Positions 1 to 54,468 of a DNA stretch of 64,000 bases are shown in pieces. The stretch covers positions 62,001-126,000 of IMG/VR virus record IMGVR_UViG_3300017971_000190; one strand, written 5' to 3'. The translations under genes and the position numbers were made by a program. The notes under the pieces were generated by a model, which saw only the letters and a program-made list of their open reading frames with translations, was not told where the DNA came from and did not search any database. Every line of letters begins with the position of its first letter. The first letter of the stretch is position 1.

Positions 1-1
1 T

Positions 2-166
2 CAGCTTTGCTTGGATGGGAAAGATGTTAAAAAAGCAGACTGGAAAGGTTTTCTAGTAGCCCGCTGTTGTACTGTAGACAAAGCATTTGCCTTCATGCCT
101 GATGCGTGGGCTAAGTATGTGGAGCCAATTCGAGTTTGGTTTAGAGCTTACGGTAATTGCAAGTAA
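2..166 (+). CDS. 3' end of a hypothetical protein (partial, runs off the window)
   Basis: Open frame from position 2 (QLCLDGKDV...YGNCK) to TAA at 164-166; read manually, not in the ORF track. Confidence 0.55.
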   Translation, partial: QLCLDGKDVKKADWKGFLVARCCTVDKAFAFMPDAWAKYVEPIRVWFRAYGNCK

Positions 167-254
167 CAAACACAGTTTAATTACCCTTTCTTTTTTCTTT
201 AGCTCCCTTTTGTAAAACTAATTTGTTGGTCAATTAAAGTAGGAGAAGACCCAT

Positions 255-599
255 ATGGAACAGCCTACATGTGTTTATTTGGTTTACTGTGATAATTTGT
301 TTACAGGATTGACTGACTTACCGACACTAGAAAGAATATTTCTCAGTCAAGAAAAGGCGGAAGCTTACTTGGCTAAAAACCCTCGTCCTGGACAAATTGA
401 AAAGTGGTTTCTAGAAGATTTTTTCGAGAAAAACTCTGAAAATAAGAGGGTAAGTACAATAAATACAAAAGATACTTACGATCACGAAGTCCTTGCAAAA
501 GAAAATGAAGAAATTAAAGAGAGAACTAAACGCTTACGGGAAGCAGATCAAAAAAGGAAGAATCAGCGGATAAAACACCGTACCCCTAACTGGACGTGA
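255..599 (+). CDS. hypothetical phage protein
   Basis: AGGAG RBS at 241-245; N-terminal VYLV...IFLSQEKAEAY pattern similar to 13339..13866; stop overlaps the next start. Confidence 0.7.
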   Translation: MEQPTCVYLVYCDNLFTGLTDLPTLERIFLSQEKAEAYLAKNPRPGQIEKWFLEDFFEKNSENKRVSTINTKDTYDHEVLAKENEEIKERTKRLREADQKRKNQRIKHRTPNWT

Positions 600-1414
600 A
601 CAAAATGTTTAAAGAAACAGCTTACCACCGCTACCTTTGGTACGTACTGCGACATAAATGGTACGTGGCGTTAGAATGTTGGAAGGAAGGTTTGTACTGG
701 GCAGCTCTAGTGCACGACTGGAGCAAGTTTTTACCTGACGAATTTATCCCTTATGCTCGTCATTTTCATGGGCCACAAGCTAAAGAAAACTTGTCTGCTG
801 AAAAAGGTAAAAGCGGTTACAAGAAACCAGTGAAGACGAATGATTCTTCTTTCGATCAAGCGTGGCTTCGGCACACTAGACGTAACCCTCACCATCCCGA
901 ATACTGGGTTATGGGGAGAGTAGGAGAAGAAGCTACACCATTCCCTATGCCAGAAAAGTATGTACGTGAAATGGTCTGTGACTGGCGTGGGGCTGGGCGA
1001 GCACAAAATAATCCAGTACCTACTCACGAATGGTATCTATCTAATTTAGACCGACTACTTCTACATCCTCAAACTCAAGCTTTGATAGAAGATACTCTAG
1101 ATGTATTTAGAACGGTTATTGGGACCGCTGAAAATACTGCTAAAGGTGGAGAAACAGTTAGAGTTCTTACTGCTGCTAGTGGTTTTAACAGGGTAGAGGT
1201 TGATTTTCAAGTTGCTCCCAGTTTTACTGTAGAAAGTGGGGATTTAGTTTGTTTGCATAATAGTAATAAAGAGGTAAGACCTTTTATCCGTTATAAATAT
1301 GATAAACCGAAAATGATTACTAGATTAATGTCAAGCGCAATTCGAAAAGTTGGAATTTTTAATATCGATTACGCAGCACTGCTTATAGACCAAACCGAAA
1401 ATAAGGAAATTTAA
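596..1414 (+). CDS. DUF5662-like HD-superfamily protein with C-terminal extension
   Basis: Motifs RHKWYV, HDWSK, AWLRH..RNPHHPEYW and EMVCDW match my recollection of DUF5662 (HD-related). Confidence 0.75.
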   Translation: MNKMFKETAYHRYLWYVLRHKWYVALECWKEGLYWAALVHDWSKFLPDEFIPYARHFHGPQAKENLSAEKGKSGYKKPVKTNDSSFDQAWLRHTRRNPHHPEYWVMGRVGEEATPFPMPEKYVREMVCDWRGAGRAQNNPVPTHEWYLSNLDRLLLHPQTQALIEDTLDVFRTVIGTAENTAKGGETVRVLTAASGFNRVEVDFQVAPSFTVESGDLVCLHNSNKEVRPFIRYKYDKPKMITRLMSSAIRKVGIFNIDYAALLIDQTENKEI

Positions 1415-2125
1415 ATGTCGTCACAGCGTTTCAGTCTTCTCAGCAAACCAGCAATTTTACACTACTTAGAAGCTGATGACATAATTATTGATCCTTTTGA
1501 TCCTGAAAATGTTGGAACAAACAGTTACGACGTTCGATTAGGTCGTCATATTTGGAGAGAACATCGGTTAGATGTTTCTCTTCCTTCTATTCACCAAAAA
1601 TATCTTTATAACCCTTATGATCAAGGACATGTAGAAACACTTTGGCACAAAGAGGAAGCTAGACCAGCCAAAGAAGTTTTAGAAATAAGCTTCATGCGTG
1701 GACATATTAAGGGTATTGATCCAGAGGATTTAATAGTTCTCATCAAACCAGGTGAGAGCATTTTAGCTCACACTCAAGAATTTATTGGTAGTCTTAGTCC
1801 CTTTATAACCACTAAAATGTTTGCTCGTAGCTCAACAGGTAGAAATTTCCTTCATGTATGTGCTGATGCTGGTGTTGGAGATGTAGGATTTGCAAATTTT
1901 TGGACCATGGAAATTTTTAATCGTAGTCGTTATCATACTATTCCTTTAGTGGTAGGTAGACGGTATGCTCAAATGACTTTCTTTGAAATTGAACCAATAG
2001 CTGATAAAGACATGTACTACAACAGAGGTAAATATCAAACTGCTTCTACTGTAGAAGAAATAAGAGCGAACTGGAAGCCTGAAGACATGCTTCCTAAAAT
2101 GTTTAAAGATAGGGAGATCAAGTAA
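1415..2125 (+). CDS. dcd: dCTP deaminase (dUTPase-like trimeric fold)
   Basis: NSYDVRLG, ILAHTQEFIG, ARSSTGR, DVGFANFWTMEI and RYAQMTF correspond to dCTP deaminase motifs. Confidence 0.9.
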   Translation: MSSQRFSLLSKPAILHYLEADDIIIDPFDPENVGTNSYDVRLGRHIWREHRLDVSLPSIHQKYLYNPYDQGHVETLWHKEEARPAKEVLEISFMRGHIKGIDPEDLIVLIKPGESILAHTQEFIGSLSPFITTKMFARSSTGRNFLHVCADAGVGDVGFANFWTMEIFNRSRYHTIPLVVGRRYAQMTFFEIEPIADKDMYYNRGKYQTASTVEEIRANWKPEDMLPKMFKDREIK

Positions 2126-2126
2126 A

Positions 2127-3102
2127 ATGACACCAGAAGAAAAAAATCGAATAGAAATAGGTTTGGATCTTGTTACTAAACGTTTAGCAGAGATTTTAGG
2201 ATTAGATGCTACTAATAAAGAAGTGTTAGAGGAACTATTTGTTAAAGTACAGTGTTATGGAGTAATGGATATAGCCGGTAAAGCAAAAATGGGTAGCACA
2301 CCTTCTGCAGAAGAATACTTAGAAAAATGTACCGAATCCATACTGAATATACAAAAGAATGTTGAAAAATAGTCAATAGAAATACAAATCACATACAATG
2401 GGATTCGTAACAAAATGATCTTGAACAAAACAAAATGACTCAATTTACAACAGTCTCCAAGTTATTCGTAGTCAAATGCAACAAGCACTTGACTCTGTTC
2501 CAGCTTCAGAGGCTAATAAGGATCACTTAAAAATACTAAAATCAACTATTGGCAGGTGGTCAAGTCTACTGGAAGGTGTTTGTCTAATGAGACAAAAAGA
2601 AATTAAGATAATTTCTCAATTGGATCCCAAAGTTGTTAGTCCGCCTTACAGTCCAGAAACTTTAGAACTGGCTAAGAAAGCTGCTGAACAAAAAGGTTGG
2701 TTAGAACGAGCTACCCCGGAAGAGAAGAAAGCTTGGGTAGAAAAACTGGCTAGAGATTTCGCTGCTGCTGGGGAAGCTGAATACAAAGTACTTAGAGAAG
2801 AAGGAATAACAAAAATGCCATCAGAAGAAAAAAGAAAAGAACAACTTCAAAAAGACATCGAGGATGGAAAAGTAGGTCATATGGAACATGACAGTGGTAA
2901 AAATTTACATTATTTAGCTGTTTGTACCTTCGTTTATATGTTGCTTGATAGTGATGCTAGAATGCAAGAAGTTTCCAGAGCTTTAGAATGTGCTCAAGGT
3001 GTAATTAAAGATAAAAATACAGAAATTACGACTGCCAATGTAGCTGCTGCAAAGCTGGCTAAAATATTAGTAGACGAGTTTCTTTGTGAGTCATTAGTTT
3101 GA
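2127..3102 (+). other. two hypothetical CDSs (2127..2372, 2476..3102)
   Basis: Co-directional ORFs in the packed gene chain; no recognisable motif. Confidence 0.6.
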
Positions 3103-3443
3103 TTTCTTCTACCACTACTAAAATTTGGCGACCGAAAACAGAAGGTGAAGTCTGTTGCTGTACCAATTTTCAATGGGGCAGTAATTGTCCCTCTTGTTTT
3201 GGTACTGGTTTTGCAGGTGGTTATGATTGTGTAGGAGTAGCAATACTTGAGGAAAGTTTCAGTTCTTATTACATTAGAGCGTTGTTCCAAATTAAAGTTG
3301 CAGATTTATTTGCTTACAATAATAGTGTTCATCAGGTGAGAACGGTACGACAGATGATGTTTTCAGACAGCTTTGAGATAAAGACAGAAAATCTTAATCT
3401 AATTTTCTACCAAATAGGCAAGTTAGTTGACTTGTTAAAATAA
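3099..3443 (+). CDS. Cys-rich neck/head-tail-connector-like paralog
   Basis: Motif WRPKTEGEVCCC...CPSCFGTGFAGGY, shared with 5207..5782 and the C-terminus of 18024..18923. Confidence 0.45.
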   Translation: MISSTTTKIWRPKTEGEVCCCTNFQWGSNCPSCFGTGFAGGYDCVGVAILEESFSSYYIRALFQIKVADLFAYNNSVHQVRTVRQMMFSDSFEIKTENLNLIFYQIGKLVDLLK

Positions 3444-3453
3444 GGAGACCACT

Positions 3454-3762
3454 GTGGACTCAATTAAAGACAAACCAAAACCAGGTCAAAAATGTAGGTA
3501 TTGTGCTGGAAAGGGAAAGTACAACAGTGAAGAGAAGTGCTACTGGTGTGAAGGTAGTGGTATAGAAAAAGTAATTTCAAATGATCTAAAACAGCACATT
3601 AAAAGGTTAAGAGTAGAGTACGATATTTTAACCACCTCAATTCATGAAATTTTTGACAAAAATGCAGAGGCTCTTAGTCTCACCCACCCTCGTTTGAGAG
3701 ACATGATCAAAGCTCGAAAACTGGTCCTGGAAACCATTATCCTTCTAAAGGAGAATCAGTAA
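3454..3762 (+). CDS. zinc-finger protein (CxxCxGxG repeats)
   Basis: CRYCAGKG and CYWCEGSG resemble DnaJ-type CxxCxGxG repeats; GGAG RBS before the GTG start. Confidence 0.6.
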   Translation: MDSIKDKPKPGQKCRYCAGKGKYNSEEKCYWCEGSGIEKVISNDLKQHIKRLRVEYDILTTSIHEIFDKNAEALSLTHPRLRDMIKARKLVLETIILLKENQ

Positions 3763-4479
3763 ATGCAAATAGAAACAGATTCCGAACTACTTAGAGCGGT
3801 AGTAGAAGGAAACAAAAGTGCTCAGCAACTCTTTGTTGAAGAGCTGTTTGCTGAAATAAAAAGCAACTTTGAAACCATGTTTTTGCCTTTTAAATGTATG
3901 AAGGCAGAAACTAAACCAACTCAAGATTGTCGATTGGCTGGTAAGGTTGATTTAATTGTAGATCCAATTACACAGTTTTCAGTGGTGGAAGATCTACCAA
4001 GTCAAGTAGAAATGCTTTTTAACGAACTGCTTGGTTCACTTCTGACTGCTTTTGAACCGGCAGTAAAGGGTTTGCTCACGGTTTGGAAAATTCCAGATAA
4101 TTTTATACTTACACCAGAAATACTCAAAAGCACTTTAAGTAATTATTCTTTTACACCTACGCATCTTTGGTGTGGATCTACTATGGTTAATTTTTTTATG
4201 TCTAGTAAGAGTTGGTATAAATTCTATGAGCCTACTACCACGTTAGAACAAGCTTCAGAGGGTCGCTTAGGTTTGCTTCGCGACATTGTAGAAAATCCTT
4301 TAGAACTATATACTGATTTGTTTCGTTATGATACATTAAGAACTTTAGATCCTGACGAGCTGGTAATTGTTTCTTCCTTCCAGCCTAAAAAAGTGTGGGT
4401 AGAGTGGAGTGACATAAAAAGACAAAAGGATGGCAGTTTTACAATTACCGCAACTCAATATGTAGGAGAGGTAGCTTAA
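3763..4479 (+). CDS. degenerate major-capsid-like protein (putative)
   Basis: C-terminal EPTTTLEQASEGRLGLLRDI...LYTDLFRYDTLRTLDPDELVIV resembles a large-phage capsid motif (DPVTQRELL..G..G.L.G..I.TD.FR....VL..GE..VV) recalled from memory. Confidence 0.45.
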   Translation: MQIETDSELLRAVVEGNKSAQQLFVEELFAEIKSNFETMFLPFKCMKAETKPTQDCRLAGKVDLIVDPITQFSVVEDLPSQVEMLFNELLGSLLTAFEPAVKGLLTVWKIPDNFILTPEILKSTLSNYSFTPTHLWCGSTMVNFFMSSKSWYKFYEPTTTLEQASEGRLGLLRDIVENPLELYTDLFRYDTLRTLDPDELVIVSSFQPKKVWVEWSDIKRQKDGSFTITATQYVGEVA

Positions 4480-4480
4480 A

Positions 4481-5244
4481 ATGGTTGAAGAAAAACAACA
4501 ACTAGTACCCATAAAATTGAAAGAAGAAAATTGCCCTCCGTTTTTGCTTGAGCTTTTAAAAATGGCTGAAGATAGTAGAGAAGAATATCCTGAAGAGGCA
4601 GGAAATGATCTCATTATTTTAGGAAGTGAAGCTATTGAAAAGCTTGGTAATTCCCTCTATGAAGTGGGTGTTGTTTTTCAGCTCAAGTTTAAAGGTAAAC
4701 CCTCGTTTAGAGTTGCTACCGTAGGCTAAAAATTTTTAGCTTGACACTACTAGCACCCTGTGATAAGGTGGGTTGTTACGCTAAGGATTAAGTGTGTGCC
4801 AGAAAATTTAAACTACAGTAAGTATGCTGGTTTTAAGATTCCTAATCACTGGCCACAGGTTTGTCCTTACTGTGGGTCTAAAAAATTGTGGCATGATTTT
4901 TCAATACCAGGTAGAGTTTTACAAAAGGCATTTTGCGTTGATTGTGAAAAAAGTTTTATTCCTCACCCCAGTATCAGATTTTGGAGACGATCATGAAAAA
5001 GCGACTACTTAAAAAGAGAAGGAAACGTGACCAAGCTCTCATGGCTGTTATCTTTGCTGATGCTGCAGCAGAATACATTCTCACTGGTTTTCCAAGTCAC
5101 CGTCCGAGCTACACCCCCCTCACACCAAAATCTACAAAAAGAGCTGTAAGAAAAACCATTAAAAAGATTAAGTTTCCAAAGAAGTACAAGTGGTTTGGTA
5201 CCATAAGTGGTCCCCTGGAAGAAAGAAGGTGCAACCGTGAGTAA
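4481..5244 (+). other. hypothetical CDSs 4481..4729, 4760..4996 (zinc ribbon, start uncertain) and 4981..5244
   Basis: Co-directional ORFs; CPYC...CVDC in 4760..4996. Confidence 0.55.
4741..4769 (+). promoter_or_regulatory. sigma70-type promoter
   Basis: TTGACA (4741-4746), 17-nt spacer, TAAGGT (4764-4769), in an intergenic gap. Confidence 0.7.
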
Positions 5245-5782
5245 GAAGAAAAATAATTTAATGGAACTCCCTAAGCAGGTACGCCAGAAGACAGTAGAGG
5301 AAGTTTTTATAGAAAAGGCCACAATCATTGTTTTTAAACCCCCTCTGACCGGTGCTGAGTGTGCTTGTCATGAAAAAATTATGGAACCAGCTGCCATTTG
5401 CCGAGAGTGTTACGGCACTGGTATTTTAGGAGGGTTTGATCTCCGAAAAGAAGTGATACCAATTGAAGAAGCTGCCTATGAAGAAATTGAGAAAGTAATT
5501 ACAGTTTTGGATACCACTAAAACAGACCACGCTTTTGCTTCTATGGATGATTGGGTTCTTCTCACTTTTGAGTGCCCTCTTCATTCGCATATTTATAGTG
5601 GATGTATTTTTGAGCTAAACAACAGATTTTGGAAAGTAACTAATGTAGAAGAAGAGTGTGAGGAAGACGCAGAAACAGGTGTTGGAAGACCTTATTGGGA
5701 AGTGCAGGCTCGCAAACTTCATGAATACGAACCAGCTTACATTTTTCTGGATGATAAACGTTGGAAAGGAGAAGAAAAGTGA
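5207..5782 (+). CDS. Cys-rich neck/head-closure-like paralog
   Basis: FKPPLTGAECAC...CRECYGTGILGGF followed by a beta-rich part (RFWKVTNV); likely start is GTG 5238. Confidence 0.5.
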   Translation: MVPWKKEGATVSKKKNNLMELPKQVRQKTVEEVFIEKATIIVFKPPLTGAECACHEKIMEPAAICRECYGTGILGGFDLRKEVIPIEEAAYEEIEKVITVLDTTKTDHAFASMDDWVLLTFECPLHSHIYSGCIFELNNRFWKVTNVEEECEEDAETGVGRPYWEVQARKLHEYEPAYIFLDDKRWKGEEK

Positions 5783-6804
5783 CAACCATTAAAGTAGGAA
5801 AATACAATGTAGATGTGGCCAACTTTAATTGTAATAGTGAGTTAGAGTGTTTTCAACTTGGTTTTGATAAAGGAACATTTGTACAAGGTCGTGGCTATGT
5901 AAAATACCACAAGAAAGAAAAACCGGTGTGCCAGACTCGGCACATTCACGGTTGCCCTCGTGTTGGTGTTTGTCTCGATTGCAGAAGTGTAATTAGTCCC
6001 AGTACAGCTTTAGCTGGAATTTGTTCTTGGTGTAGAGGTACAAATATTCAGTTAGACGAAAAGGATGCTACTAGTAATGATACCATTAAATGAATATGGT
6101 TATAAAAAAGGAATACTTTACGCTGACTGGGGCTGTCCTACTTGTCGTAAAGTTGTCTACCAAAATACTACTGAAGACGCTTTTAGTAAAGAGCGTATCT
6201 GTCACAGTTGTCAAAAAGCGAATAAAGAAGCCGAAAGACGATCTAAACATCTTTGGGAATTAGCCCAAACTGAACGTCCTCCCATTAGGTACAAAAACGG
6301 TATTTATGGAATTAGAGATGATCTATTTTCTTACTTGATTGGAATGTCTACTCCAGTTATAGATAGAAACTTACAAAGGCTTTACGCAAAGTCAGATCTT
6401 CAAATTCCTCAAAGGATTATCCCTACGCATCATAAAGAGTTTTAAAAATGAAACGGTTAACCAGAAAAATAGTTCATGAAGAATTGCTCCATTTTAACTT
6501 ATTTACTGTAACTCCGACTATTAGAGGATTTGATTTAGGCTATGGGCAAGACGGGTTTACAAGACTTCTAACAGGTGGTGGAATAGCTGGTAATGGTTAC
6601 AAGTGGTGGCTGTGCACTATTGGTGGAGTAACGCTTGCTGGCCCGCTTGTAACCAAAAAGCAGCTACAACGCTGTTTAAGGGAACACTTAGCTGGTTATT
6701 GTAATCGACCACAAGATCAATCTGGTTGGAGAACGTATGCCAGACTAAATAAAAATAAAAACGGAGAACATTACATTTGGGTGCAAAGCAGGATACCACA
6801 ATGA
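5761..6804 (+). other. hypothetical CDSs 5761..6093, 6065..6445 and 6448..6804
   Basis: Overlapping co-directional ORFs; the first two carry CxxC pairs. Confidence 0.6.
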
Positions 6805-7715
6805 CAACTAGCAGAGTTTTAAAATTAGCCAGACAAAAGTTAATCACTCCCCCACCATTCGTAGCCGGATCTATTCAGTACGAAGTAATTATGGGAAGTG
6901 AAGCATATGGAGTCTCTTCTGGAGATAGCGATAGAGACGTATACGGTTTTTGTGTCCCACCAAAGTCTATAGTATTTCCTCACACAGTTGGAGATATTCT
7001 AGGATTTGGACGACAGAAAAAACGATTTGAACAATATCAGCAACATCATGTTTATGACAAAGATGCTTTAGGTGGTAAAGGCGTTGAATATGATTTTTCT
7101 ATTTATAATATTGTAAAATATTTTAGTCTTTGTATGGAAAACAATCCGAATATGATCGACTCTCTTTTCGTTCCACAACGTTGTATTCTTTATATTACTA
7201 AAATTGGTCAAATGGTTAGAGAGAAAAGACAGTTGTTTCTTCATAAAGGTGCTTGGTTCAAATTTAAAGGTTATAGTTACAGCCAAATCAAAAAGATGAA
7301 AATTAAGAATCCGGAACCAGGAAGTAAAAGATATGAGAATATTAAAAAATTTGGTTTCGATGTAAAATTTGCTTATCATGTGGTACGTCTTCTTAATGAA
7401 GTTGAGGAGATTTTAGTAGAACAACATCTTACATTGGATAGAAATAGAGAACAATTAAAAGCAATTCGACGTGGAGAGTGGACTTTAGAACAAGTTGAAG
7501 ATTATTTCAATAAAAAAGAAGCAGAGCTTGAAACTGCTTATACTGAAAGTAAATTACAACACAGTCCAAATGAAGAAGTTATTAAAAATTTACTTCTCTC
7601 TTGTTTAGAAGAGTACTATGGTAATTTAGAAAACTGTGTTGAAATTCCCAATGCTGAGAAAGAGGCATTAAGAGAGATTGATAGAACTCTTGAAAAAGTA
7701 AGACACTGCTTATAG
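6801..7715 (+). CDS. DNA polymerase beta superfamily nucleotidyltransferase (RlaP/YcgL-like)
   Basis: GSEAYG...DSDRD signature (hG[GS]x9-13Dh[DE]), NNPN.ID.LF and helical C-terminus FDVKFAYHVVRLL; ATG 6801 overlaps the upstream stop. Confidence 0.85.
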   Translation: MTTSRVLKLARQKLITPPPFVAGSIQYEVIMGSEAYGVSSGDSDRDVYGFCVPPKSIVFPHTVGDILGFGRQKKRFEQYQQHHVYDKDALGGKGVEYDFSIYNIVKYFSLCMENNPNMIDSLFVPQRCILYITKIGQMVREKRQLFLHKGAWFKFKGYSYSQIKKMKIKNPEPGSKRYENIKKFGFDVKFAYHVVRLLNEVEEILVEQHLTLDRNREQLKAIRRGEWTLEQVEDYFNKKEAELETAYTESKLQHSPNEEVIKNLLLSCLEEYYGNLENCVEIPNAEKEALREIDRTLEKVRHCL

Positions 7716-7732
7716 AAAACAGGTGGAAGAAA

Positions 7733-7966
7733 ATGACTCCTAAAGACAACAATTTTAATGGTATTACTGTGGAAGTGGGTGGTAAAGTAATTGGAAAAAT
7801 AAAAGAGTGGAAGCCACAAAAAGAAATACCTGAAAAACTGACCATACCAGGTATTGATTTTCTACCCCCAATTAGCAAATTTGACGAGTTTGTAAAAACT
7901 ATTCATCTTCGTGTTTCTAGAACTTGGTGTGATGTATTGAGAGCTATAGGAAGAGAAGATGAATAA
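7733..7966 (+). CDS. mini-protein resembling the N-terminus of the tail tube protein
   Basis: GITVEVGGKVIGKIKEW aligns with GITIEANGAVLGRIQSW of 42992..43546. Confidence 0.6.
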   Translation: MTPKDNNFNGITVEVGGKVIGKIKEWKPQKEIPEKLTIPGIDFLPPISKFDEFVKTIHLRVSRTWCDVLRAIGREDE

Positions 7967-8721
7967 TCCTCCTCACATGATTTTAGAAAATTGGGATGGT
8001 TTTGATTCCACTGCTGAAGTCTGGTTTGACCTAGCAAATGAAAAAGTAATTGTTAAGCAAAATTTTCCTGAGACACAGCTGCAAGGTTGCTTCTTTAAAG
8101 TGAGGTTTTCACTTTACCATCATTTGCCTTTGAAGGAATTTGAAGATGAAAAATGAAGACACTAAGTGGTACATCCTTACACTTGTTTTAACTATACTCT
8201 TCATGGTTGCCGGTATATTAGCAGTAGGAATGCACGCTAGAAAAACGGCTTTTGAACGACAATTAAATTACCATAAACGTAGAGACGGGACTTGCAAACT
8301 GTACCAAGAATCCAAAGAGCTAAAACTTCAAAATGAACACTTAAGACTACAGGTTGCTAGTTACACTGCTGCTAGGTGGAATAGTGTAGAAGACTATACC
8401 TCTTCTGTTTGTGATTTTCCACGCAAATTTGATCATCATTTTGACGTTGCTTTTGGGGGCTGTGAACTCGCTAAAAAAGGAGACAAGTGGGATTTAGCTA
8501 CTCGTAGTATGAGTAATCAAATACTGTTGTGGTATTGTAGAATTAGAGAAAACAGTCTCACCAATACATTACCAAAGAAACAAAGACGTAAATGGGAAAG
8601 GGATGCTGGCTTGTGTGCTCTCCGTTGGGCCACAATATTGGATGACTCAAGAGTGACTACTTTAGATACTTCAGTTGAGGGTCTTAGAGCTATCATTACT
8701 TGGAAAGTAAAGAGGGGATAA
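7959..8721 (+). other. hypothetical CDSs 7959..8156 and 8140..8721 (N-terminal TM helix plus coiled coil)
   Basis: Hydrophobic WYILTLVLTILFMVAGILAVG in the second ORF. Confidence 0.6.
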
Positions 8722-9522
8722 ATGACACTTCACTGGGTTATACAAAACAATCTTCACGAAGAACAAGGTTACGACGTTCTTGTGGAAACGGTTAAGCGAT
8801 TTGAACTCCCTCACACTTTCGTCAAGGTAATTCCTTTTTCTCATGAATTAGTTTCAGAAGACCCTCTTCCAGATCCTCCTGGTTTAAAAATAGTAATGGG
8901 CTCTATCAGTCTTGGCAAGGCAGCTGAAAAACTGGGTTGGTTACCAGGAGCGTTTATCAATAGTAATTTTCATTTTCGAGAGTGGAGAAAACACTACGGT
9001 CAGCATCTTTTAAATGATGACGCTACCATTTGTAAGTTCAAAGATGTCAAGTGGGATGAAGATTGGGGATCTTTCTTTATTCGTCCTTGTTTAGATGACA
9101 AGAGCTTTTCTGGTCAAATCCTGAGTTGGAAAGATTACGACAGTTGGCGTCACAAAGTAGTAGATCTACAAGAACACGATACATCTTTTTACTGCTTGAC
9201 TCCGGAGACAGAAGTATGTTACGGTAAACCAAAAGAAATCTACCAGGAGTGTAGATTTTTCGTAGTAGATGGGAGAATTGTAACTGGCTCCCAGTACAAA
9301 ATAGGTAGACGAGTAATCTCTAATGAAGTAGTGCCTCCTAAGCTCCAGGAATTAGCTCAAACTATGGTGGATTTGTGGCAACCTCACCGGGCTTTTGCTC
9401 TTGACATTGCTGACACACCAAACGGATTTAAAGTCATAGAAATTGGTTGTCTCAATAGTTGTGGGTTCTATGCTGCCAATGTCCAGAAGCTAGTATTAGC
9501 TTTAAACGAAATGGAGTTTTAA
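8722..9522 (+). CDS. ATP-grasp domain protein (DUF4343/R2K-like)
   Basis: FFIRPCLDDKSFSG, ECRFFVVDGRIVTGSQY and AFALDIAD...KVIEIGCLNSCGFY are ATP-grasp motifs. Confidence 0.85.
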   Translation: MTLHWVIQNNLHEEQGYDVLVETVKRFELPHTFVKVIPFSHELVSEDPLPDPPGLKIVMGSISLGKAAEKLGWLPGAFINSNFHFREWRKHYGQHLLNDDATICKFKDVKWDEDWGSFFIRPCLDDKSFSGQILSWKDYDSWRHKVVDLQEHDTSFYCLTPETEVCYGKPKEIYQECRFFVVDGRIVTGSQYKIGRRVISNEVVPPKLQELAQTMVDLWQPHRAFALDIADTPNGFKVIEIGCLNSCGFYAANVQKLVLALNEMEF

Positions 9523-28430: not shown

Positions 28431-30002
28431 ATGATTTTGAAAATCATCCCCATCCGTCCCGCTGGAAGACCACATCTGAAAAATATTAATCGTTACGTAG
28501 AAGGTTCTGAATTTTCAATAGAGCTTCATACGTTTAATGACGAAAAGACGTATGAGGCTTGGCTTGTAGAAAGAACCTCCATAGAAAGTATTGAGCACAG
28601 TACACTAAATATTCACGATTATAAAGGATTGGACAGCTGGCAAGTATTTGTCGTAGATGTTGAGAATTTCTTAGATGGAGACTTTGTTGTTTCTACTCAA
28701 ACCATTCTTTGCAATCGTATATTTCTGCTTAACGACAAGGGAAAGACAGTAGACACATTTAACACAACAAATCCATTAGTATTTCCTAGAAAGCGAGAAA
28801 ATGAAACTAAATTCATAGATGGACATGGAGGTACTGTTGAAATAGAAGATGGAAAAATTAAACATACTACACCATTAAAAAATGTTTTTGAATTAAAAAA
28901 TGTTTTTGATGGACTGAAAGAAAGTGTGGGGCAAGAATTTAGAAAAAGGCAAGAATTCGTAGCAAATTTAACTGAAGAACAAGAAAAAGAACTTGGAGCG
29001 CATTTTTATGGTGGTAACATTGGAGGGAAGGTAGAGGTTATAGAAGGGGTAACAGTCAAACCTTTAACTGTCGATAAACCAACTCCTTGTCCCTCCATTC
29101 TTCATTGGTGTACAGAACTGAAATATCTGGGCGGTAAAAATGTTTGGCCAGAGAATTTAAAAACTTTACTAGCTGCTTTTCAGGAACAGTGCCCCTCTTG
29201 TGGAGCTGCCCTTCGTTACGGTCGTTGTGTTCTTTGTGATAAATCCAAACAAGAATTATTTTCTCACCCGATCAATGAGGTAGTAGGAATTAGAGGGCAA
29301 CGCACTGGTAGCAGCTTTCTATCGGCCATAGCTGCTACCTACCAGTTACAAAAAATACTCTCTTTAGATATGAGTTTAAGTACCTACTATGATATGCCTC
29401 CTACGGAATTTGAAATGGTACTAGTAGATCCAGGAAAACATATTTGGAATCACTTTTGGGAATTAATACACAATTCACCTTGGTTTGAGCAATACTGGAG
29501 TTTCTTAAAAAATGCAGTTAATTGGGGTTTCAGTAGACCTAGCAATGATAAAGCTATTTTTACTGCCAACGAAAAGACGAATTTAATTGTACGAAGAGGA
29601 GGAGTGGAAGAGAACTACAAAGGAAAAACCAGAATTTTTGCTGCCATAGATGATCCAGATTGGGTAGATTGTTATGGTAATAAAGATAAACGGGTTCCTA
29701 TAGTAGATATTTATACAAGCCTTAAGAGTAGCCTTTCAACGGTGAAAAAGAAAGCTAACGATCAAAATTATAAATTGCAACCCTTGTTGTGGTTAATGGG
29801 TCCTCCTAACGGAGAAGGTGTAACTAAAAGTCTTCTTAGAAAAATAAAACAAGCTAAAAAGAAAAAAGTCAACCAACTAATTCTACATCAACCAACTTGG
29901 GAAATTAATCCAGAAACCAGCGAGGAAGAACTACGGAAAGAAGCCAGAAATGATGCAGAATTTCGTCGTGACTTTGGTGCTGAATTTGTAAAAGTGAAAT
30001 AA
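28431..30002 (+). CDS. fusion of an N-terminal LLNDKGKT domain and a degenerate terminase-large-subunit ATPase domain
   Basis: NEVVGIRGQRTGSS (Walker A-like, lacking Lys), SPWF, KGKTRIFAAIDD (Walker B DE to DD), HQPTWEINP and RRDFGAEF follow large-phage TerL order; ends before any nuclease domain. Confidence 0.7.
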   Translation: MILKIIPIRPAGRPHLKNINRYVEGSEFSIELHTFNDEKTYEAWLVERTSIESIEHSTLNIHDYKGLDSWQVFVVDVENFLDGDFVVSTQTILCNRIFLLNDKGKTVDTFNTTNPLVFPRKRENETKFIDGHGGTVEIEDGKIKHTTPLKNVFELKNVFDGLKESVGQEFRKRQEFVANLTEEQEKELGAHFYGGNIGGKVEVIEGVTVKPLTVDKPTPCPSILHWCTELKYLGGKNVWPENLKTLLAAFQEQCPSCGAALRYGRCVLCDKSKQELFSHPINEVVGIRGQRTGSSFLSAIAATYQLQKILSLDMSLSTYYDMPPTEFEMVLVDPGKHIWNHFWELIHNSPWFEQYWSFLKNAVNWGFSRPSNDKAIFTANEKTNLIVRRGGVEENYKGKTRIFAAIDDPDWVDCYGNKDKRVPIVDIYTSLKSSLSTVKKKANDQNYKLQPLLWLMGPPNGEGVTKSLLRKIKQAKKKKVNQLILHQPTWEINPETSEEELRKEARNDAEFRRDFGAEFVKVK

Positions 30003-32856: not shown

Positions 32857-35800
32857 GTGTCTTCCCTTCCCAAAACTTACGGTCGTTTTTGGCTTAAAGA
32901 TTCTACTTGGCATGTGGCTTGTGAACCACATGTCATGATTAGATTAAAGCGTACTTTTGACAAAGTACGAAAAGACCAGTACGATGTAATTACTCTAGCA
33001 GACTCTCCAGAAACCTGCCGTGAACTTCTTTGGTTCACCCTTCGTTTTCCTCTCACTGCTATTGATGAACCCACCCAATTTTACCTGGAAGAGCAAGCTG
33101 AAAAACATGAAAGGGAGGAGAAGGAAGTACACCTGCTACTGAGCGGTGAGGTGGAACCCAAAAACTTTAAACTTCGTTTGCCTCTTCGCCCATACCAACG
33201 TATTGCCACCGATTTAGCTCTTAAAACAGGAGGATTATTAATTGCTGACGATCTCGGAACTGGAAAGACTGCTTGTATTATTGGTATGTTTACAGATCAA
33301 CGTACCAGACCAGCTTTAGTTGCTACTCTTGCACATCTCACTTATCAGTGGCAAGCTGAAATAAATCGCTTCGCTCCTGAACTTACCACTCACATAATTA
33401 AGCAGGGAAAGTTTTACCAATTTTCTAAAGACAACATTTTTCCAGATGTTCTTATAACTAGTTATTACAAGTTGCATAGTTGGGCTGAGCATTTAGCTGG
33501 AAAAATTCGTTGTGTAGCCTTTGATGAAATACAAGAACTAAGACATGGAGAAATGAGTTTAAAAGGTTCAGCATCTTTTCATATTTCTGATCAAGCATCT
33601 TTCAGAGTCGGCGCTAGCGCTACTCCATTTTATAATTACGGCGCTGAAATGTTTAATATTATGAAAGCCCTTCGTCCTGGAGTACTAGGGACTTTCTCAG
33701 AATTTGCTAGGGAGTGGCTCAGCTGGGATGGTAAAAAACTAAAAGATCCCAAAGCATTTGGAACCTATCTTCGCGATCATGGTTATATGATTCGTAGAAC
33801 CAGAGAAGATATTAGGAGAACTATTCCCACCCTTACTAAAGTTCCACATTGGATTGATTTTGATTTTGAAGCTCTCGACGCTTTAAAATCATCGGCAGAT
33901 GAATTGGCTCTTTCTATTGTTCGATATGATCCAACTATTGATGAAGAGACACAAAAAGACAAATTCGCTAGAGAAAATGAATTCAAGCAACTTTTACGAC
34001 AAGCAACTGGAATTGGAAAAGCTCCCTATGTTGCAGAATTTGTCCGCATGCTTGTGGAAACTGGTGAACAAGTAGTTGTATTTTTGTGGCACCGCGAATG
34101 TTATTCGATACTAAAAGATCGTCTTAGTGATTATAAACCATCTATGTATACAGGTTCGGAAAGTCCACAACGAAAAAGAAAACAGTTTAATCGTTTCGTG
34201 AGAAAAGAAACTCCAATATTGTTAATTTCTCTCCGCTCAGGCGCTGGACTAGACGGTCTTCAATATCATTGCCGCACTGTCGTTTTTGGAGAATTAGATT
34301 GGTCCCCCGGAGTTATGGAGCAATGCTTAACAATGGAAACAGAAATTTTAACTAAAAAAGGATTTTGCAAAGAAAATGAAGTAGAAGTTGGAGATGAAGT
34401 AGCCGCTTTTGATATAAAAGATAGTAGTATTAAATGGAAGCCAGTTCTGCATAAAGTTTGTAGAAAGTTAGGTAAAAAAGAAAAACTTTTTTACACAGAG
34501 ACGAAAAAAATGGCTTTTAAAGTTACTGGAGATCATAGACTTATTGTGCGGCGTAGTAGACGCACAATTTCAGGAGAAAATAGGTCTGATTGGAAATTTA
34601 AATTAGCAAAGGACGTAGCTGGTAAAAATAGACGATTTGTTCCTACGTGTGGTTTGGAAAAAACTATAGGTGTTGATCTCACAAGTTATGAATTAAGGTT
34701 TTTAGGGTGGTATATTTCTGACGGAAGTTTTAATGGTAATCAAGTAACCATTTACCAAGCTGCTCATCAACCTTGGAATGATGATATTGTAGAAGTTTTA
34801 AATGGTTGTGAATTTACTTGGTATAGATATGAAAGGATTAATACCAACGGTAATTTGTTATATATGTATTGTGTACCAAAAGGGAACGTACAACGTTGGA
34901 CTAAAAATGAAATAAGTACATTCATAAAAATGAAGAAAAAAGGAGTTTCTTATAAAGAAATAGAGGAAAAAATTAATAGACCTAGAAGTAGTCTTTATAA
35001 AAGGTGGGCAAAATTTAAATCGGGTTACAAATATGAATTGATTCCTCCCAAAAATCGAACTACTAAGGGTTGGGAATATTTAGAAAAATATTTAGACAAA
35101 AATTTAAGTCCACTTCTAGAAAACGTTACTCGTGAACAACTAATAAATATTATTCACGGACTTTATATGGGGGATGGTACTAAAAATGAAAGTCGTGAAA
35201 ATGTGGTAATGATTGGCGGTACTAACAAAATTCTTTTCGATCGTCTGCAATCATTATGTGTAAGACGTGGGATGTCTGCTACTATATCTACACACAAAAA
35301 ACCAAAAGATCCGAATAGAAAAATCTCACATACTATTTATATATCTAAATTTGAAGATGCTTACATACCCGGTCCTAATAAACCTAATGTATTGTCAGAA
35401 GTGGAACCAACAAAAAATGAGAAAGTTTGGTGTGTTACAAATGAATTAGGAACATTGGTTACCAGGTATAATGGTAAAGTTGCTGTAGTTGGAAATTGTA
35501 TAGGTCGGGTACATAGAGACGGACAACTAGATGACGTAACAGCTTACTTTTTGTTAGCCAATGGGGGAAGTGATCCTTACGTTTCAGAACTGTTAGGAAT
35601 TAAAAGAGCCCAAATAGAAGGCGTCAAAGATCCAGAAGGTGCCGTTCTTCCCAATTACGATTTAGATAACGTTTCTGTAAAAGAACTAGCGCTTAACTAC
35701 ATGAACCAACGACAAGAAGGAAAGGCGGTAGAAGTCATGCCAACAAACAGAAAAAATTTAGAAACTTATCCTTTGGAAAGTGAAGAGAGTAACATTAAAG

Positions 35801-36042
35801 CCTACTTAACGGACGAAATTAAAATTGAGTTGTCTGAAGGTTTAGCCAATTTTACAAAGGAGAATGATCTGCTAGATCTTATTGACAAAGAACTACTAAC
35901 AGGTTTCTTAAATTCCCTTGGTTTAAAACCCTCTAAAAAGCTGCATAAAAAATTGGTTAAAAATTTGTGCCTGTCTCTTTTAGAAGCTGCTTGTAGAGCG
36001 ACTATCAATGATCGAAAAGTAATTAAAACACATGACTTGTAG
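32857..36042 (+). CDS. SNF2-family helicase/ATPase, intein-containing
   Basis: LIADDLGTGKT (motif I), FDEIQELR (II), SATP (III), GAGLDGLQ (V) and Q/CIGRVHRDGQ (VI, split by the intein). Confidence 0.92.
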   Translation: MSSLPKTYGRFWLKDSTWHVACEPHVMIRLKRTFDKVRKDQYDVITLADSPETCRELLWFTLRFPLTAIDEPTQFYLEEQAEKHEREEKEVHLLLSGEVEPKNFKLRLPLRPYQRIATDLALKTGGLLIADDLGTGKTACIIGMFTDQRTRPALVATLAHLTYQWQAEINRFAPELTTHIIKQGKFYQFSKDNIFPDVLITSYYKLHSWAEHLAGKIRCVAFDEIQELRHGEMSLKGSASFHISDQASFRVGASATPFYNYGAEMFNIMKALRPGVLGTFSEFAREWLSWDGKKLKDPKAFGTYLRDHGYMIRRTREDIRRTIPTLTKVPHWIDFDFEALDALKSSADELALSIVRYDPTIDEETQKDKFARENEFKQLLRQATGIGKAPYVAEFVRMLVETGEQVVVFLWHRECYSILKDRLSDYKPSMYTGSESPQRKRKQFNRFVRKETPILLISLRSGAGLDGLQYHCRTVVFGELDWSPGVMEQCLTMETEILTKKGFCKENEVEVGDEVAAFDIKDSSIKWKPVLHKVCRKLGKKEKLFYTETKKMAFKVTGDHRLIVRRSRRTISGENRSDWKFKLAKDVAGKNRRFVPTCGLEKTIGVDLTSYELRFLGWYISDGSFNGNQVTIYQAAHQPWNDDIVEVLNGCEFTWYRYERINTNGNLLYMYCVPKGNVQRWTKNEISTFIKMKKKGVSYKEIEEKINRPRSSLYKRWAKFKSGYKYELIPPKNRTTKGWEYLEKYLDKNLSPLLENVTREQLINIIHGLYMGDGTKNESRENVVMIGGTNKILFDRLQSLCVRRGMSATISTHKKPKDPNRKISHTIYISKFEDAYIPGPNKPNVLSEVEPTKNEKVWCVTNELGTLVTRYNGKVAVVGNCIGRVHRDGQLDDVTAYFLLANGGSDPYVSELLGIKRAQIEGVKDPEGAVLPNYDLDNVSVKELALNYMNQRQEGKAVEVMPTNRKNLETYPLESEESNIKAYLTDEIKIELSEGLANFTKENDLLDLIDKELLTGFLNSLGLKPSKKLHKKLVKNLCLSLLEAACRATINDRKVIKTHDL
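34324..35496 (+). mobile_element. intein with LAGLIDADG homing endonuclease (391 aa)
   Basis: Starts CLTMETEILT (block A), has VTGDHR (block B), FLGWYISDG and HGLYMGDG (LAGLIDADG), and VWCVTNELGTLVTRYNGKVAVVGN followed by +1 Cys. Confidence 0.92.
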
Positions 36043-51858: not shown

Positions 51859-52276
51859 ACGTGAAAAATCTCACATAGATTGGAAATTTCTAATCGTCTC
51901 CAATCTGCTTCTGTTTCAGCAGCTTCTTCGTACCCGTTTTTTAACCCTTCAATTTCTCCCACGTCAGGGAAGCAATCAAGCTCTTTTGGCAGTTCCTCCA
52001 GTTTGTGGAGCACAGTCTCGTCATCGTAAAACATGGTTTTTGTCCCTTTTAGAGTTGTAGTATCCATTGGTCAATTATGACTACATTACCATTATGTATA
52101 ACTAATTTGTAATCCCCACCTAAAAGATCTGGGTTTTCATGCTTAAACTTAGCAATTAAGTATTCCGCTGTCATCTGTGATAAAGAACCCAGTTCTAATG
52201 TACCCTCCTTTACTCCAAATACAGAGCTGGTAGCCGTCCAGGTCAACGTAACCGGTGTTTTTCTAGTGTTGTGCAA
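51855..52276 (-). other. two small hypothetical CDSs (52049..52276, 51855..52067)
   Basis: Minus-strand pair with a GAAGGA RBS, downstream of a minus-strand TTGACA at 52345-52350. Confidence 0.6.
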
Positions 52277-52321
52277 AATCGAGTTCCTTCCAAAATACAG
52301 GTTCTAGCACCTAGTAATACG

Positions 52322-52350
52322 AGCCTGGCACACTTTTGAGATCGTGTCAA
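52322..52350 (-). promoter_or_regulatory. possible divergent sigma70-type promoter
   Basis: Minus strand TTGACA, 17 nt ending TGC, CAGGCT. Confidence 0.4.
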
Positions 52351-52479
52351 GTTTTCTTCTCTTTTTAATCGCACTGTAATTTTATTTTACAAATACAAAA
52401 ATAATTTTTAGTTGAAGGCAGTAATTTCAAATAGTTGGACTTATTCCTAAAAATAGGACAGTCTACTTTTCTTTTTTGG

Positions 52480-52508
52480 TTGACAAACCGTTGTTTTACT
52501 GTTACAAG
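52480..52508 (+). promoter_or_regulatory. sigma70-type promoter of parB
   Basis: TTGACA, 17 nt ending TGT, TACAAG; RBS GGAGA before ATG 52554. Confidence 0.6.
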
Positions 52509-52553
52509 ATAATAGAGAGTTGAAAACAAAGTTTCTACAACGGAGAAATTAAA

Positions 52554-53591: not shown

Positions 53592-53603
53592 TTAATTTCA
53601 CTC

Positions 53604-53813
53604 TACCCGTTGCGTGCTAGGGACGTAGGTTCAAACCAACAACGGGTAACGAGACCAATTAGCAATTGGTCTAGTGAGGACGAGACCTCATGATGAGAAG
53701 CCGAGTAGCTCTCGGTAAAAAACGGGAGTAGTTACGACCTAACGTACCGTGCCGTGAGACACGTGGAAATAAGCTGGAGATTAACAATCGAAGAAAGCGG
53801 ATTTCCAATCTCA
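53604..53813 (+). ncRNA. candidate structured non-coding RNA (unassigned family)
   Basis: Consecutive stems TACCCGTTG/CAACGGGTA, AGACCAATT/AATTGGTCT, TGAGG/CCTCA, CCGAG/CTCGG, GTTA/TAAC, CGTG/CACG and GAGATT/AATCTC in a GC-rich gap with no ORF. Confidence 0.6.
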
Positions 53814-53839
53814 CATTTTTAATTTGGAGAAAAAGTCAA

Positions 53840-54197: not shown

Positions 54198-54212
54198 AAA
54201 GGAGAAACTATC

Positions 54213-54404: not shown

Positions 54405-54439
54405 ACCTTCTTTTCTCTCCTTCCACTTTGTAAAAACTG

Positions 54440-54468
54440 TTGACACTGCTCCACATTAGTGGTAGCAT
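54440..54468 (+). promoter_or_regulatory. sigma70-type promoter with extended -10
   Basis: TTGACA, 17 nt ending TGG, TAGCAT; CCACAT/ATGTGG inverted repeat straddles the -10. Confidence 0.75.

What the first reader, a model, noticed from the sequence alone, without database searches (positions are those of the whole stretch)
3763..4479. 238-aa protein resembling a degenerate major capsid protein
The segment EPTTTLEQASEGRLGLLRDI...LYTDLFRYDTLRTLDPDELVIV parallels an HK97-fold A-domain motif I recall from large-phage capsids. The ORF is short for such a capsid and sits among small accessory genes with no portal, protease or scaffold nearby.
Basis: inference. Interest (0 to 1): 0.6.

Follow-up and report, generated by a model that had tools for sequence, protein, structure and literature searches.

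The report
Trimmed capsid-protein paralog in jumbo phage
This 238-residue gene is an intact, conserved but fast-evolving copy of the phage's own major capsid protein that has lost the parts needed to knit a shell together, so it probably does an accessory job away from the capsid lattice.

Summary
The ORF is real: window 3763-4479 (+), 238 aa, with a Shine-Dalgarno site, and the quoted segment is residues 156-203. The window is part of a 221.7-kb marine virus record. Its true major capsid protein (MCP, 379 aa, phrog_2522 E 5e-47) lies about 80 kb away on the other strand. The ORF aligns to that MCP (BLASTP E 2e-11; profile-profile 99.8 %, E 9e-29, residues 7-208 against MCP 89-329). An AlphaFold2 model (pLDDT 93) matches only HK97-fold capsid proteins and encapsulins (Z up to 9.3; TM 0.78 over 230 of 238 residues to MCP clusters). 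Compared with the MCP it lacks the roughly 88-aa propeptide and the roughly 40-aa E-loop, and has a shorter P-domain hairpin and no last strand. It is not decaying: 18 relatives of 228-278 aa (one carries an N-terminal extension) form one group. They evolve much faster than the MCPs, lie in non-structural neighbourhoods, and are absent from cultured phages, Pfam and PHROGs. In close relatives the gene sits in a tight three-gene cassette behind a DnaJ-type zinc-finger protein. Function is inferred: an off-lattice, MCP-derived accessory factor, most likely acting on capsid assembly. A minor virion role or an immune decoy role remain open.

The parts
3763..4479 (+). Gene for the 238-aa trimmed HK97-fold paralog of the phage's major capsid protein (protein P0001)
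   Evidence: ORF. Homology to the genome's own MCP. Model pLDDT 93. HK97-fold matches.
3748..3753 (+). Shine-Dalgarno sequence AAGGAG, 9 nt upstream of the ATG. The upstream gene's TAA (3760-3762) abuts the start codon.
   Evidence: Read directly from the sequence. No promoter or terminator signal above chance in 1-9000.
3781..3894 (+). N-terminal helices (residues 7-44) that align with the N-arm helices of the mature MCP (MCP 89-132). No counterpart of the MCP's residues 1-88 (propeptide).
   Evidence: hhalign. Secondary structure. The MCP profile matches the PDB chain 6wkk_A only from MCP residue 86 onward.
3895..3921 (+). Site of the missing E-loop: about 7 residues (45-53) stand where the MCP has about 40 (residues 138-178)
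   Evidence: Large gap in hhalign and in the MAFFT alignment. The MCP model has strands 134-137, 146-150, 170-174 and 179-188 around a low-confidence tip; the P0001 model has only strand 54-66 there.
3985..4068 (+). Spine helix (residues 75-102), with the family's near-invariant E98 opposite the MCP's invariant D216
4078..4371 (+). A-domain (residues about 106-203). It contains the block shared with the MCPs: P157, G167, G170, D185, F187, R188, Y189, T191 and L195, matching MCP P283, G293, G296, D306, F308, R309, Y310, T312 and L316.
4387..4470 (+). Shortened C-terminal beta-hairpin (strands 209-215 and 226-236), where the MCP has the long P-domain hairpin 331-366 plus a last strand 372-377. 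It carries the family-specific Trp-rich strand (W212, W215).
3454..3762 (+). Upstream, translationally coupled gene for a 102-aa protein with two CXXCXGXG motifs (DnaJ-type zinc finger) and a helical tail. It is conserved upstream of the closest homolog, where its stop overlaps the start as ATGA.
   Evidence: (PF00684, E 0.0017, below the curated cutoff).
4481..4729 (+). Downstream gene for an 82-aa protein of unknown function, starting 2 nt after the stop. It is conserved (37 % identity) after the closest homolog, and a gene of similar size (90 aa) follows the 43 % homolog.

Best explanation
The gene encodes an intact paralog of this jumbo-phage lineage's own HK97-fold major capsid protein. 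A duplicate of the MCP gene lost the N-terminal propeptide and the E-loop, its P-domain hairpin and C-terminus were shortened, and it moved (or arose) away from the head-gene region. It kept the N-arm helices, the spine helix and the A-domain, including the block most conserved in the MCPs (P..G..G ... D.FRY.T...L). In the close relatives the gene is co-translated in a tight cassette with a DnaJ-type zinc-finger protein upstream and a small protein downstream. Shown: the homology, the fold, what was lost, the conservation, the fast evolution, the patchy distribution and the gene context. Inferred: in HK97-type shells the E-loop and P-domain hairpin tie subunits and capsomers together. Losing the E-loop and shortening the hairpin, plus losing the propeptide that probably guides the MCP into the procapsid, make it unlikely to be a lattice-forming subunit. 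It more likely works as a soluble capsid-protein look-alike. My preferred mechanism is an MCP-directed assembly factor: it uses the retained A-domain and spine surfaces to hold or cap MCP subunits (chaperone or assembly modulator), possibly together with the zinc-finger partner. My odds: MCP-derived HK97-fold paralog 0.97; not a regular lattice subunit about 0.7; specifically an MCP-directed assembly factor about 0.3.
For: Homology: own-genome search E 3e-8; BLASTP E 2e-11; all 17 family members hit true MCPs at E 1e-6 to 2e-21; profile-profile 99.8 %, E 9.1e-29 over residues 7-208 against MCP 89-329. The target is the real MCP: phrog_2522 E 5e-47, annotated major head proteins of phiRSL1, Lu11 and Motura at about 30 % identity, and PDB 6wkk_A 'Gp27 major capsid protein' E 2e-16. 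Fold: pLDDT 93; only HK97-fold matches. Losses. A real, selected gene: Shine-Dalgarno site; 18 relatives of constant size; syntenic neighbours at 43 % identity. Accessory and fast-evolving: branch lengths about 5-10 times those of the MCPs. In matched genomes the MCPs are 38-50 % identical while the short paralogs barely align. Only 2 of 15 large related phage records carry any second short copy. None was found in 50,697 cultured phage records. Non-structural contexts. Coupled zinc-finger cassette.
Against: No experiment or expression data exist; the only public runs that hold the sequence are DNA. The complex prediction of P0001 with the mature MCP gave no verdict, so binding is untested. The + strand gene block also holds the terminase large subunit, so position alone does not make the gene 'early' or non-structural. 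The shared conserved block may simply stabilise the fold (for example, the spine-helix acid pairing with the FRY arginine) rather than mark an interface. The zinc-finger hit is below Pfam's cutoff, and zinc ribbons are common in phage small proteins. More distant family members have other neighbours.
Confidence: 0.55

Rival explanations
1. It is a minor virion component: a specialised capsomer subunit (at a vertex, next to the portal, or at another unique site) that co-assembles with MCP hexamers, as T4 gp24 or SaPIbov5 Ccm do.
For: MCP paralogs that occupy pentamer positions are known: T4 gp24 (PDB 1yue is among the best structural matches, Z 9.1) and Ccm (PMC8569155). The A-domain, which packs around the capsomer centre, is the best conserved part. 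Structural genes are often scattered in jumbo phages, and the terminase gene is in the same strand block.
Against: gp24 and Ccm keep the E-loop, and Ccm also keeps its delta domain. This protein lacks both the E-loop and the propeptide. The genome already has a full-length second MCP paralog inside the structural block, a better vertex candidate. The family is patchy and evolves far faster than the MCP, which is unusual for a lattice component. Its neighbours are nucleotide-metabolism and small genes of unknown function.
Confidence: 0.2
2. It is a capsid mimic used in conflict. Either it is a decoy or antagonist for host immune sensors that recognise the HK97 fold of the MCP, or it is a dominant-negative subunit that poisons capsid assembly of competing phages or satellites.
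For: Fast evolution and patchy distribution are typical of conflict genes. [quoted passage not shown] That is the part retained here, while the assembly elements are gone. Mobile elements are known to acquire MCP homologs to interfere with capsid assembly (PMC8569155). One relative carries tandem copies.
Against: A faithful MCP mimic would be expected to trigger such sensors rather than block them. No known anti-defence family matches, although only Pfam and PHROGs were scanned. No defence or anti-defence genes were recognised next to it. A poison subunit would need to spare the phage's own MCP.
Confidence: 0.15
3. It builds its own small cage or ring (encapsulin-like) that holds a cargo or enzyme during infection.
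For: Its size (238 aa) and best structural matches resemble family 1 encapsulins (Z about 9 over about 190 of about 265 residues). [quoted passage not shown] It is tightly coupled to small neighbouring genes.
Against: There is no encapsulin Pfam match. Its nearest sequence relatives are the phage's own MCPs, not encapsulins. Encapsulins keep an E-loop. No cargo-type enzyme lies in the cassette.
Confidence: 0.06
4. It is a decaying remnant of a duplicated capsid gene, or a chance ORF, with no function.
For: It is shorter than any MCP of the family and has no Pfam or PHROG match.
Against: It has an intact ORF with a Shine-Dalgarno site, a very confident compact model, and 18 relatives of the same length down to 17 % identity with shared family-specific residues. 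Cassette and synteny are conserved. Two metagenome runs from two studies hold all of the sampled 31-letter words, though either may be the source sample.
Confidence: 0.02

Closest known systems
The phage's own major capsid protein (379 aa, G000:C1:146172-147311, minus strand; phrog_2522; the family of the phiRSL1, Lu11, Motura and BcepSauron major head proteins and of PDB 6wkk 'Gp27 major capsid protein', which I recall, from memory only, as the phage G capsid entry)
   Same: Demonstrable common ancestry. Same order of N-arm helices, spine helix, A-domain and C-terminal hairpin. Shared conserved block P..G..G ... D.FRY.T...L.
   Different: No propeptide (MCP 1-88), no E-loop (MCP about 138-178), a shorter P hairpin and no final strand. 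About 33 % identity, and only over 87 residues. Does not reach the PHROG model. Encoded 80 kb away on the other strand among non-structural genes. Evolves several times faster.
T4 gp24 vertex protein (an MCP paralog that forms pentamers)
   Same: A virus-encoded paralog of the MCP with the HK97 fold, and a top structural match (1yue, Z 9.1, 198 residues).
   Different: From established knowledge, gp24 is a full-length virion protein with an E-loop, encoded next to gene 23. Here the E-loop is absent and the gene is remote from the head genes. A separate full-length paralog in this genome (C1:204937-206025) fits the gp24 role better.
SaPIbov5 Ccm (an MCP homolog of a phage satellite that redirects capsid size)
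   Same: An accessory MCP homolog encoded outside a normal head module that acts on the capsid assembly of another MCP (PMC8569155).
   Different: Ccm keeps the N-arm, E-loop, spine helix, A-domain and a cleaved delta domain, and it sits in the shell as pentamers. It belongs to a satellite, not to the phage itself.
Encapsulins: Family 1 shell proteins and the truncated Family 4 'A-domain encapsulins'
   Same: Compact or truncated HK97-fold proteins used outside virions. Family 1 is of similar size and gives Z about 9. Family 4 shows that the fold tolerates loss of whole elements (PMC8346489).
   Different: No encapsulin Pfam match. It is phage-encoded and derived from the phage's MCP. Family 1 keeps the E-loop. 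Family 4 keeps only the roughly 100-aa A-domain, whereas this protein keeps the N-arm, spine helix, P-domain sheet and A-domain.

Membership tests
HK97-fold capsid protein superfamily (fold level) | Spine helix with P-domain sheet, followed by an A-domain of helices around a central sheet | tested here: met
   Model pLDDT 93. All significant structural matches are HK97-fold capsids or encapsulins. TM 0.78 over 230 of 238 residues to MCP clusters.
HK97-fold capsid protein superfamily (fold level) | Extended E-loop hairpin between the N-arm and the spine helix | tested here: not met
   About 7 residues stand where the MCP has about 40 (hhalign gap; MAFFT; secondary structure). This is inferred from alignments and secondary-structure strings, because model coordinates could not be inspected.
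HK97-fold capsid protein superfamily (fold level) | Self-assembly into pentamers, hexamers and closed shells | not testable with these tools
   The only complex job (P0001 with the mature MCP) gave no verdict.
This lineage's major head protein family (phrog_2522 / 6wkk Gp27-like) | Significant sequence homology to family members | tested here: met
This lineage's major head protein family (phrog_2522 / 6wkk Gp27-like) | Matches the family model over its full length | tested here: not met
   No PHROG or Pfam family at E <= 1. None of the 17 members hits phrog_2522. In the trees the 18 short proteins are separated from all MCPs (SH-aLRT 99).
This lineage's major head protein family (phrog_2522 / 6wkk Gp27-like) | N-terminal propeptide of about 85-90 residues ahead of the mature domain | tested here: not met
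   The alignment starts at MCP residue 89 against P0001 residue 7. The PDB chain 6wkk_A aligns only from MCP residue 86.
This lineage's major head protein family (phrog_2522 / 6wkk Gp27-like) | Encoded in the head-gene region | tested here: not met
   The MCP sits next to a virion structural protein gene (phrog_16710) in the minus-strand block. P0001 sits among dCTP deaminase, RlaP and small genes of unknown function.
T4 gp24-type vertex paralog | Full-length HK97 subunit, with E-loop, present at capsid vertices | tested here: not met
   The E-loop is absent. Presence in virions is not testable here.
Family 1 encapsulin | Match to the encapsulin shell family model (PF04454), with a cargo gene carrying a targeting peptide next to it in a cellular genome | tested here: not met
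   No Pfam hit. The context is a phage genome. The neighbours show no cargo-type enzyme.
Family 4 A-domain encapsulin | Protein of about 100 aa consisting of the A-domain only (DUF1884) | tested here: not met
   The protein has 238 aa and retains the N-arm helices, spine helix and P-domain strands. No Pfam hit.
Ccm-type capsid-size redirecting MCP homolog | Satellite-encoded, full HK97 fold with E-loop and delta domain, incorporated into the shell as pentamers | tested here: not met
   It is encoded by the phage itself and lacks the E-loop and propeptide. Incorporation into the shell is not testable here.

The most novel reading that the evidence does not exclude
A family of E-loop-less, propeptide-less 'mini-capsid proteins' has been exapted from the major capsid protein of marine jumbo phages for a job outside the virion. 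The possibilities are a dedicated capsid-protein assembly chaperone working with a DnaJ-type zinc-finger partner, a molecular mimic that blunts host immune sensors of the HK97 fold, or a poison of rival capsids. Any of these would be a new functional class of HK97-fold protein encoded by a phage itself.
Probability: 0.45. Interest if true: 0.8.

Novelty: new variant of a known kind. Interest (0 to 1): 0.58.

Why it matters
The HK97 fold is the universal building block of tailed-phage and herpesvirus capsids. Its known off-shoots are few: vertex paralogs, satellite size-redirectors and cellular encapsulins. This is a phage-encoded derivative that shed the elements tying subunits into a lattice but kept the capsomer-forming core, and it has persisted as a distinct, fast-evolving family that no database names. 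If it modulates assembly, it bears on how very large capsids are built accurately. If it is a mimic, it would be a new counter-move to the capsid-sensing immune systems described recently. It is also a compact HK97 scaffold with a very confident predicted fold, which may interest protein-cage engineers. For annotation, such genes should not be called 'major capsid protein' on the strength of a fold hit.

Tried and rejected
Pfam and PHROGs scans of the protein and of all 17 family members found no family.

Megablast of the region and tblastn of P0001 against cultured phages found nothing. tblastn with P0007 hit only annotated MCP genes.

The search for related loci with the family alignments failed or found nothing in IMG/VR.

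The profile search of PDB sequences with the short family gave only a chance hit at E 0.5.

The ESM-Atlas look-alike search was useless, because the Atlas's own single-sequence model of this protein is poor (pLDDT 0.36).

Complex prediction of P0001 with the mature MCP (residues 89-379) gave 'no answer' (score 0.01). This is evidence neither for nor against binding.

My first MCP alignment (A3) wrongly included P0017, which is a short-family protein with an N-terminal extension. I rebuilt it without P0017 (A4), and the profile-profile result was unchanged.

The MCP neighbourhood (10 proteins) gave no PHROG annotation, so portal, protease and scaffold could not be located.

The genome search could not reach the 365-kb ENA contig.

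The promoter/terminator scan was not above chance. There were no tRNAs and no Rfam matches in the window.

No RNA runs hold the sequence.

No alternative genetic code was needed.

Rejected readings: chance ORF or pseudogene; the true MCP of this phage; an encapsulin of cellular type.

Full report
1. THE OBSERVATION

Window 3763-4479 (+) is an ATG-to-TAA ORF of 238 codons, and its translation contains the quoted segment at residues 156-203. The opposite strand is closed in that frame. AAGGAG lies at 3748-3753, 9 nt before the ATG, and the upstream gene's TAA abuts the start. The ORF has no Pfam or PHROG family and no near-identical DNA among cultured phages.

2. THE GENOME

The window is bases 62001-126000 of a 221,679-bp IMG/VR virus record that CheckV estimates as 63 % complete.
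- Genes run on the + strand up to about 127 kb. This block holds replication and nucleotide-metabolism genes and also a terminase large subunit.
- From about 128 kb on, nearly all large genes run on the - strand, including the MCP and virion-protein genes.
- GC content is about 0.37.
- The same stretch occurs in a sediment and a seawater metagenome. No RNA run holds it.

3. THE PROTEIN IS A PARALOG OF THE PHAGE'S OWN MAJOR CAPSID PROTEIN

Finding the partner:
- Searching the whole record with the protein found one other place, inside a 379-aa ORF at C1:146172-147311 (-) (E 3e-8).
- That ORF matches phrog_2522 'major head protein' at E 5.2e-47, and its upstream neighbour matches a virion structural protein.
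- It matches the annotated major head proteins of phiRSL1, Lu11, Motura, BcepSauron and the Erwinia and Dickeya jumbo phages at about 29-31 % identity.
- Its family profile matches PDB chain 6wkk_A 'Gp27 major capsid protein' at E 2e-16 over residues 86-372. The first about 85 residues are therefore a propeptide-like extension absent from that PDB chain.

Strength of the relationship:
- BLASTP of the two proteins gives E 2e-11, with 33 % identity over P0001 121-207 against MCP 247-328.
- The word search found only two close relatives (63 % and 43 %) and the family scans left the protein open, so I ran the exhaustive profile search. It returned 18 hits. Fifteen were short proteins (228-278 aa). 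One was P0017, a 378-aa protein that proved to be a short-type domain with an extra N-terminal 170 residues. One was a true MCP.
- Every short member on its own hits true MCPs at E 1e-6 to 2e-21.
- Profile against profile (17 short proteins versus 23 true MCPs, with P0017 removed after I noticed my error) gives probability 99.8 %, E 9.1e-29, aligning P0001 7-208 with MCP 89-329.

4. THE FOLD

- AlphaFold2 with the 17-sequence alignment gave pLDDT 93 and pTM 0.87.
- Foldseek against the PDB lists only encapsulins and phage capsid proteins. Scores are modest (best E 8.7e-4, TM about 0.4), as expected when the flexible arms differ.
- VIA-align gives Z 9.3-7.7 over 170-212 residues for the Bxb1, T7, HRP29, phi29 and lambda capsids, T4 gp24 and many encapsulins.
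- BFVD gives capsid proteins, including the Motura MCP (TMq 0.58).
- The ESM-Atlas shape search gives TM 0.78 and 0.77 over 230 and 227 of the 238 residues (rmsd 3.7 and 3.6) to two 'major capsid protein' clusters of 371 and 353 aa.

5. WHAT WAS KEPT AND WHAT WAS LOST

I compared the secondary structure of the P0001 model with that of the MCP model (pLDDT 73) through the alignments.

Kept:
- N-arm helices (P0001 7-44 = MCP 89-132).
- Spine helix (75-102 = 198-227).
- A-domain helices and strands (106-203 = 234-324).

Lost or reduced:
- The propeptide (MCP 1-88).
- The E-loop (MCP about 138-178, against about 7 residues here).
- Part of the long P-domain hairpin (MCP 331-366, against 209-236 here).
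- The last strand (MCP 372-377).

Residues conserved in both families are P157, G167, G170, D185, F187, R188, Y189, T191 and L195 (MCP P283, G293, G296, D306, F308, R309, Y310, T312, L316), plus an acidic residue on the spine helix (E98 / D216). Family-specific residues include F36, F40 and W215. I could not inspect coordinates, so I cannot say whether the shared block lies at the capsomer interface or in the fold core.

6. IT IS A SELECTED, ACCESSORY, FAST-EVOLVING GENE

- The family keeps its length down to 17 % identity.
- In the tree the 18 P0001-type proteins form one bipartition (SH-aLRT 99). Their branches are several-fold longer than those of the MCPs.
- In three genomes that have both genes, the MCPs are 38-50 % identical over their full length. 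The short paralogs share 21-24 % over about 100 residues, or only the motif.
- I searched 15 large IMG/VR records (153-424 kb) that carry this MCP type with the short-family profile. It found the MCP in all 15, but a second, short copy in only two (278 aa and 257 aa). In the tree those two fall outside the P0001-type group, near the base of the MCPs. MCP duplicates may therefore have arisen more than once. Long branches make this unsure.
- Cultured phages have no detectable member.

7. GENE CONTEXT

- In the window the gene lies between a dCTP deaminase (1415-2125) and an RlaP-type nucleotidyltransferase (6777-7715), among small genes of unknown function.
- The same order (DCD ... 103 aa, 230 aa, 90 aa ... 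RlaP) is found around the 43 % homolog, next to thymidylate kinase and topoisomerase genes.
- Other members lie among UvrD helicase and NYN genes, in arrays of 60-90-aa ORFs, or beside a large helicase, a metallophosphatase and a radical-SAM gene. In none of these contexts was a neighbour recognisable as a head gene.
- In one 365-kb contig two family members are tandem neighbours (P0017, then P0008).

The upstream cassette partner:
- The gene at 3454-3762 encodes a 102-aa protein with two perfect CXXCXGXG motifs. Its match to PF00684 (DnaJ central domain) has E 0.0017, below the curated cutoff.
- Its stop abuts the P0001 start. In the 63 % homolog's contig the same protein's stop overlaps the start as ATGA, and the downstream small protein is 37 % identical.
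- Zinc ribbons also lie just upstream of one of the two out-group short paralogs and are fused to the N-terminus of the other. Such motifs are common in phage small proteins, so I treat this only as a lead.

8. HOW IT MOST LIKELY WORKS (INFERENCE)

In HK97-type shells the E-loop reaches over neighbouring subunits, and the P-domain hairpin meets other capsomers. The A-domains pack around the capsomer axis. This is established knowledge of the fold.

A copy without the E-loop and propeptide but with an intact A-domain and spine is poorly equipped to extend a lattice. It could still dock onto MCP subunits, or onto anything that recognises them.

Taking this together with the accessory distribution, the fast evolution and the coupling to a DnaJ-type zinc-finger protein, I favour an off-lattice, MCP-directed assembly factor (about 0.3). 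The alternatives are a specialised minor capsid subunit (about 0.2), a mimic used against capsid-sensing immunity or rival capsids (about 0.15), and a cage of its own (about 0.06). The only interaction test available returned no verdict.

9. COMPARISON WITH WHAT IS KNOWN

- The protein has the HK97 fold, but it is not a member of the MCP family model.
- It lacks the E-loop that gp24, Ccm and family 1 encapsulins keep.
- It retains far more than the A-domain-only Family 4 encapsulins.
- Literature searches for MCP paralogs of this kind in jumbo phages found nothing comparable.
- I therefore rate it a new variant of a known kind.

10. LIMITS

- All functional statements are inference.
- The MCP model is only moderately confident (pLDDT 73).
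- Tree placement of the long branches is unreliable.
- The genome search uses a loose first look, so divergent short copies may have been missed in the 15 records.

Noticed in passing
Outside the window: G000:C1:204937-206025 (+), fetched within L068: A second, full-length MCP paralog. The ORF is 362 aa, and the true start is probably an internal Met near residue 29. It is 27 % identical to the MCP over residues 129-359 (E 5e-28). It is the only large + strand gene inside the - strand structural block, and is a candidate vertex (T4 gp24-like) protein.
   Followed up: partly
window 3454-3762 (+): A 102-aa protein with two perfect CXXCXGXG motifs (DnaJ-type zinc finger; PF00684 E 0.0017, below cutoff) and a helical tail. 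It is translationally coupled to the capsid-like gene and conserved upstream of its closest homolog (L069, ATGA overlap). Small DnaJ-like zinc-finger proteins act as assembly chaperones in other systems (from memory).
   Followed up: partly
L070:3805-4941 and 5001-5723 (a 365-kb ENA contig): Two members of the short capsid-like family are tandem neighbours. The first carries an extra N-terminal domain of about 170 aa. They are 26 % identical to each other over 229 residues.
   Followed up: partly
L066:1393-2166 (-) and L065:229-957 / 964-1800 (+): Two complete jumbo-phage genomes (424 kb and 350 kb) carry other short MCP-derived proteins (257 and 278 aa) that fall outside the P0001-type group. 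One has an N-terminal zinc ribbon fused to it and lies next to a 230-aa gene with a DPPW motif (MT-A70-type methyltransferase motif, by eye). The other follows a Cys-rich 242-aa gene.
   Followed up: partly
window 32857-36042 (+): A 1061-aa SNF2/DEAD-type helicase that appears to carry an intein: a Hint module at residues 488-591 and a LAGLIDADG domain at 761-830.
   Followed up: no
window 52000-56000: A patch of higher GC content (0.44-0.47, against about 0.38 elsewhere) that contains a ParB-like gene (52554-53591) overlapped by a 274-aa ORF on the opposite strand. It may be a mobile or recently acquired segment.
   Followed up: no
window 28431-30002 (+): The terminase large subunit (phrog_17415, E 6.5e-16, C-terminal nuclease half only) lies in the + strand 'replication' block, more than 50 kb from the MCP gene. 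Head-related genes are scattered in this genome.
   Followed up: no
L002:1-978 (-), i.e. G000:C1 about 144834-145811: The gene two downstream of the MCP gene (an 81-aa ORF lies between them) carries a DUF5661 domain (E 8e-13). The window also has a DUF5662 protein at 596-1414. I recall both as domains from giant-virus or jumbo-phage proteins of unknown role (from memory).
   Followed up: no
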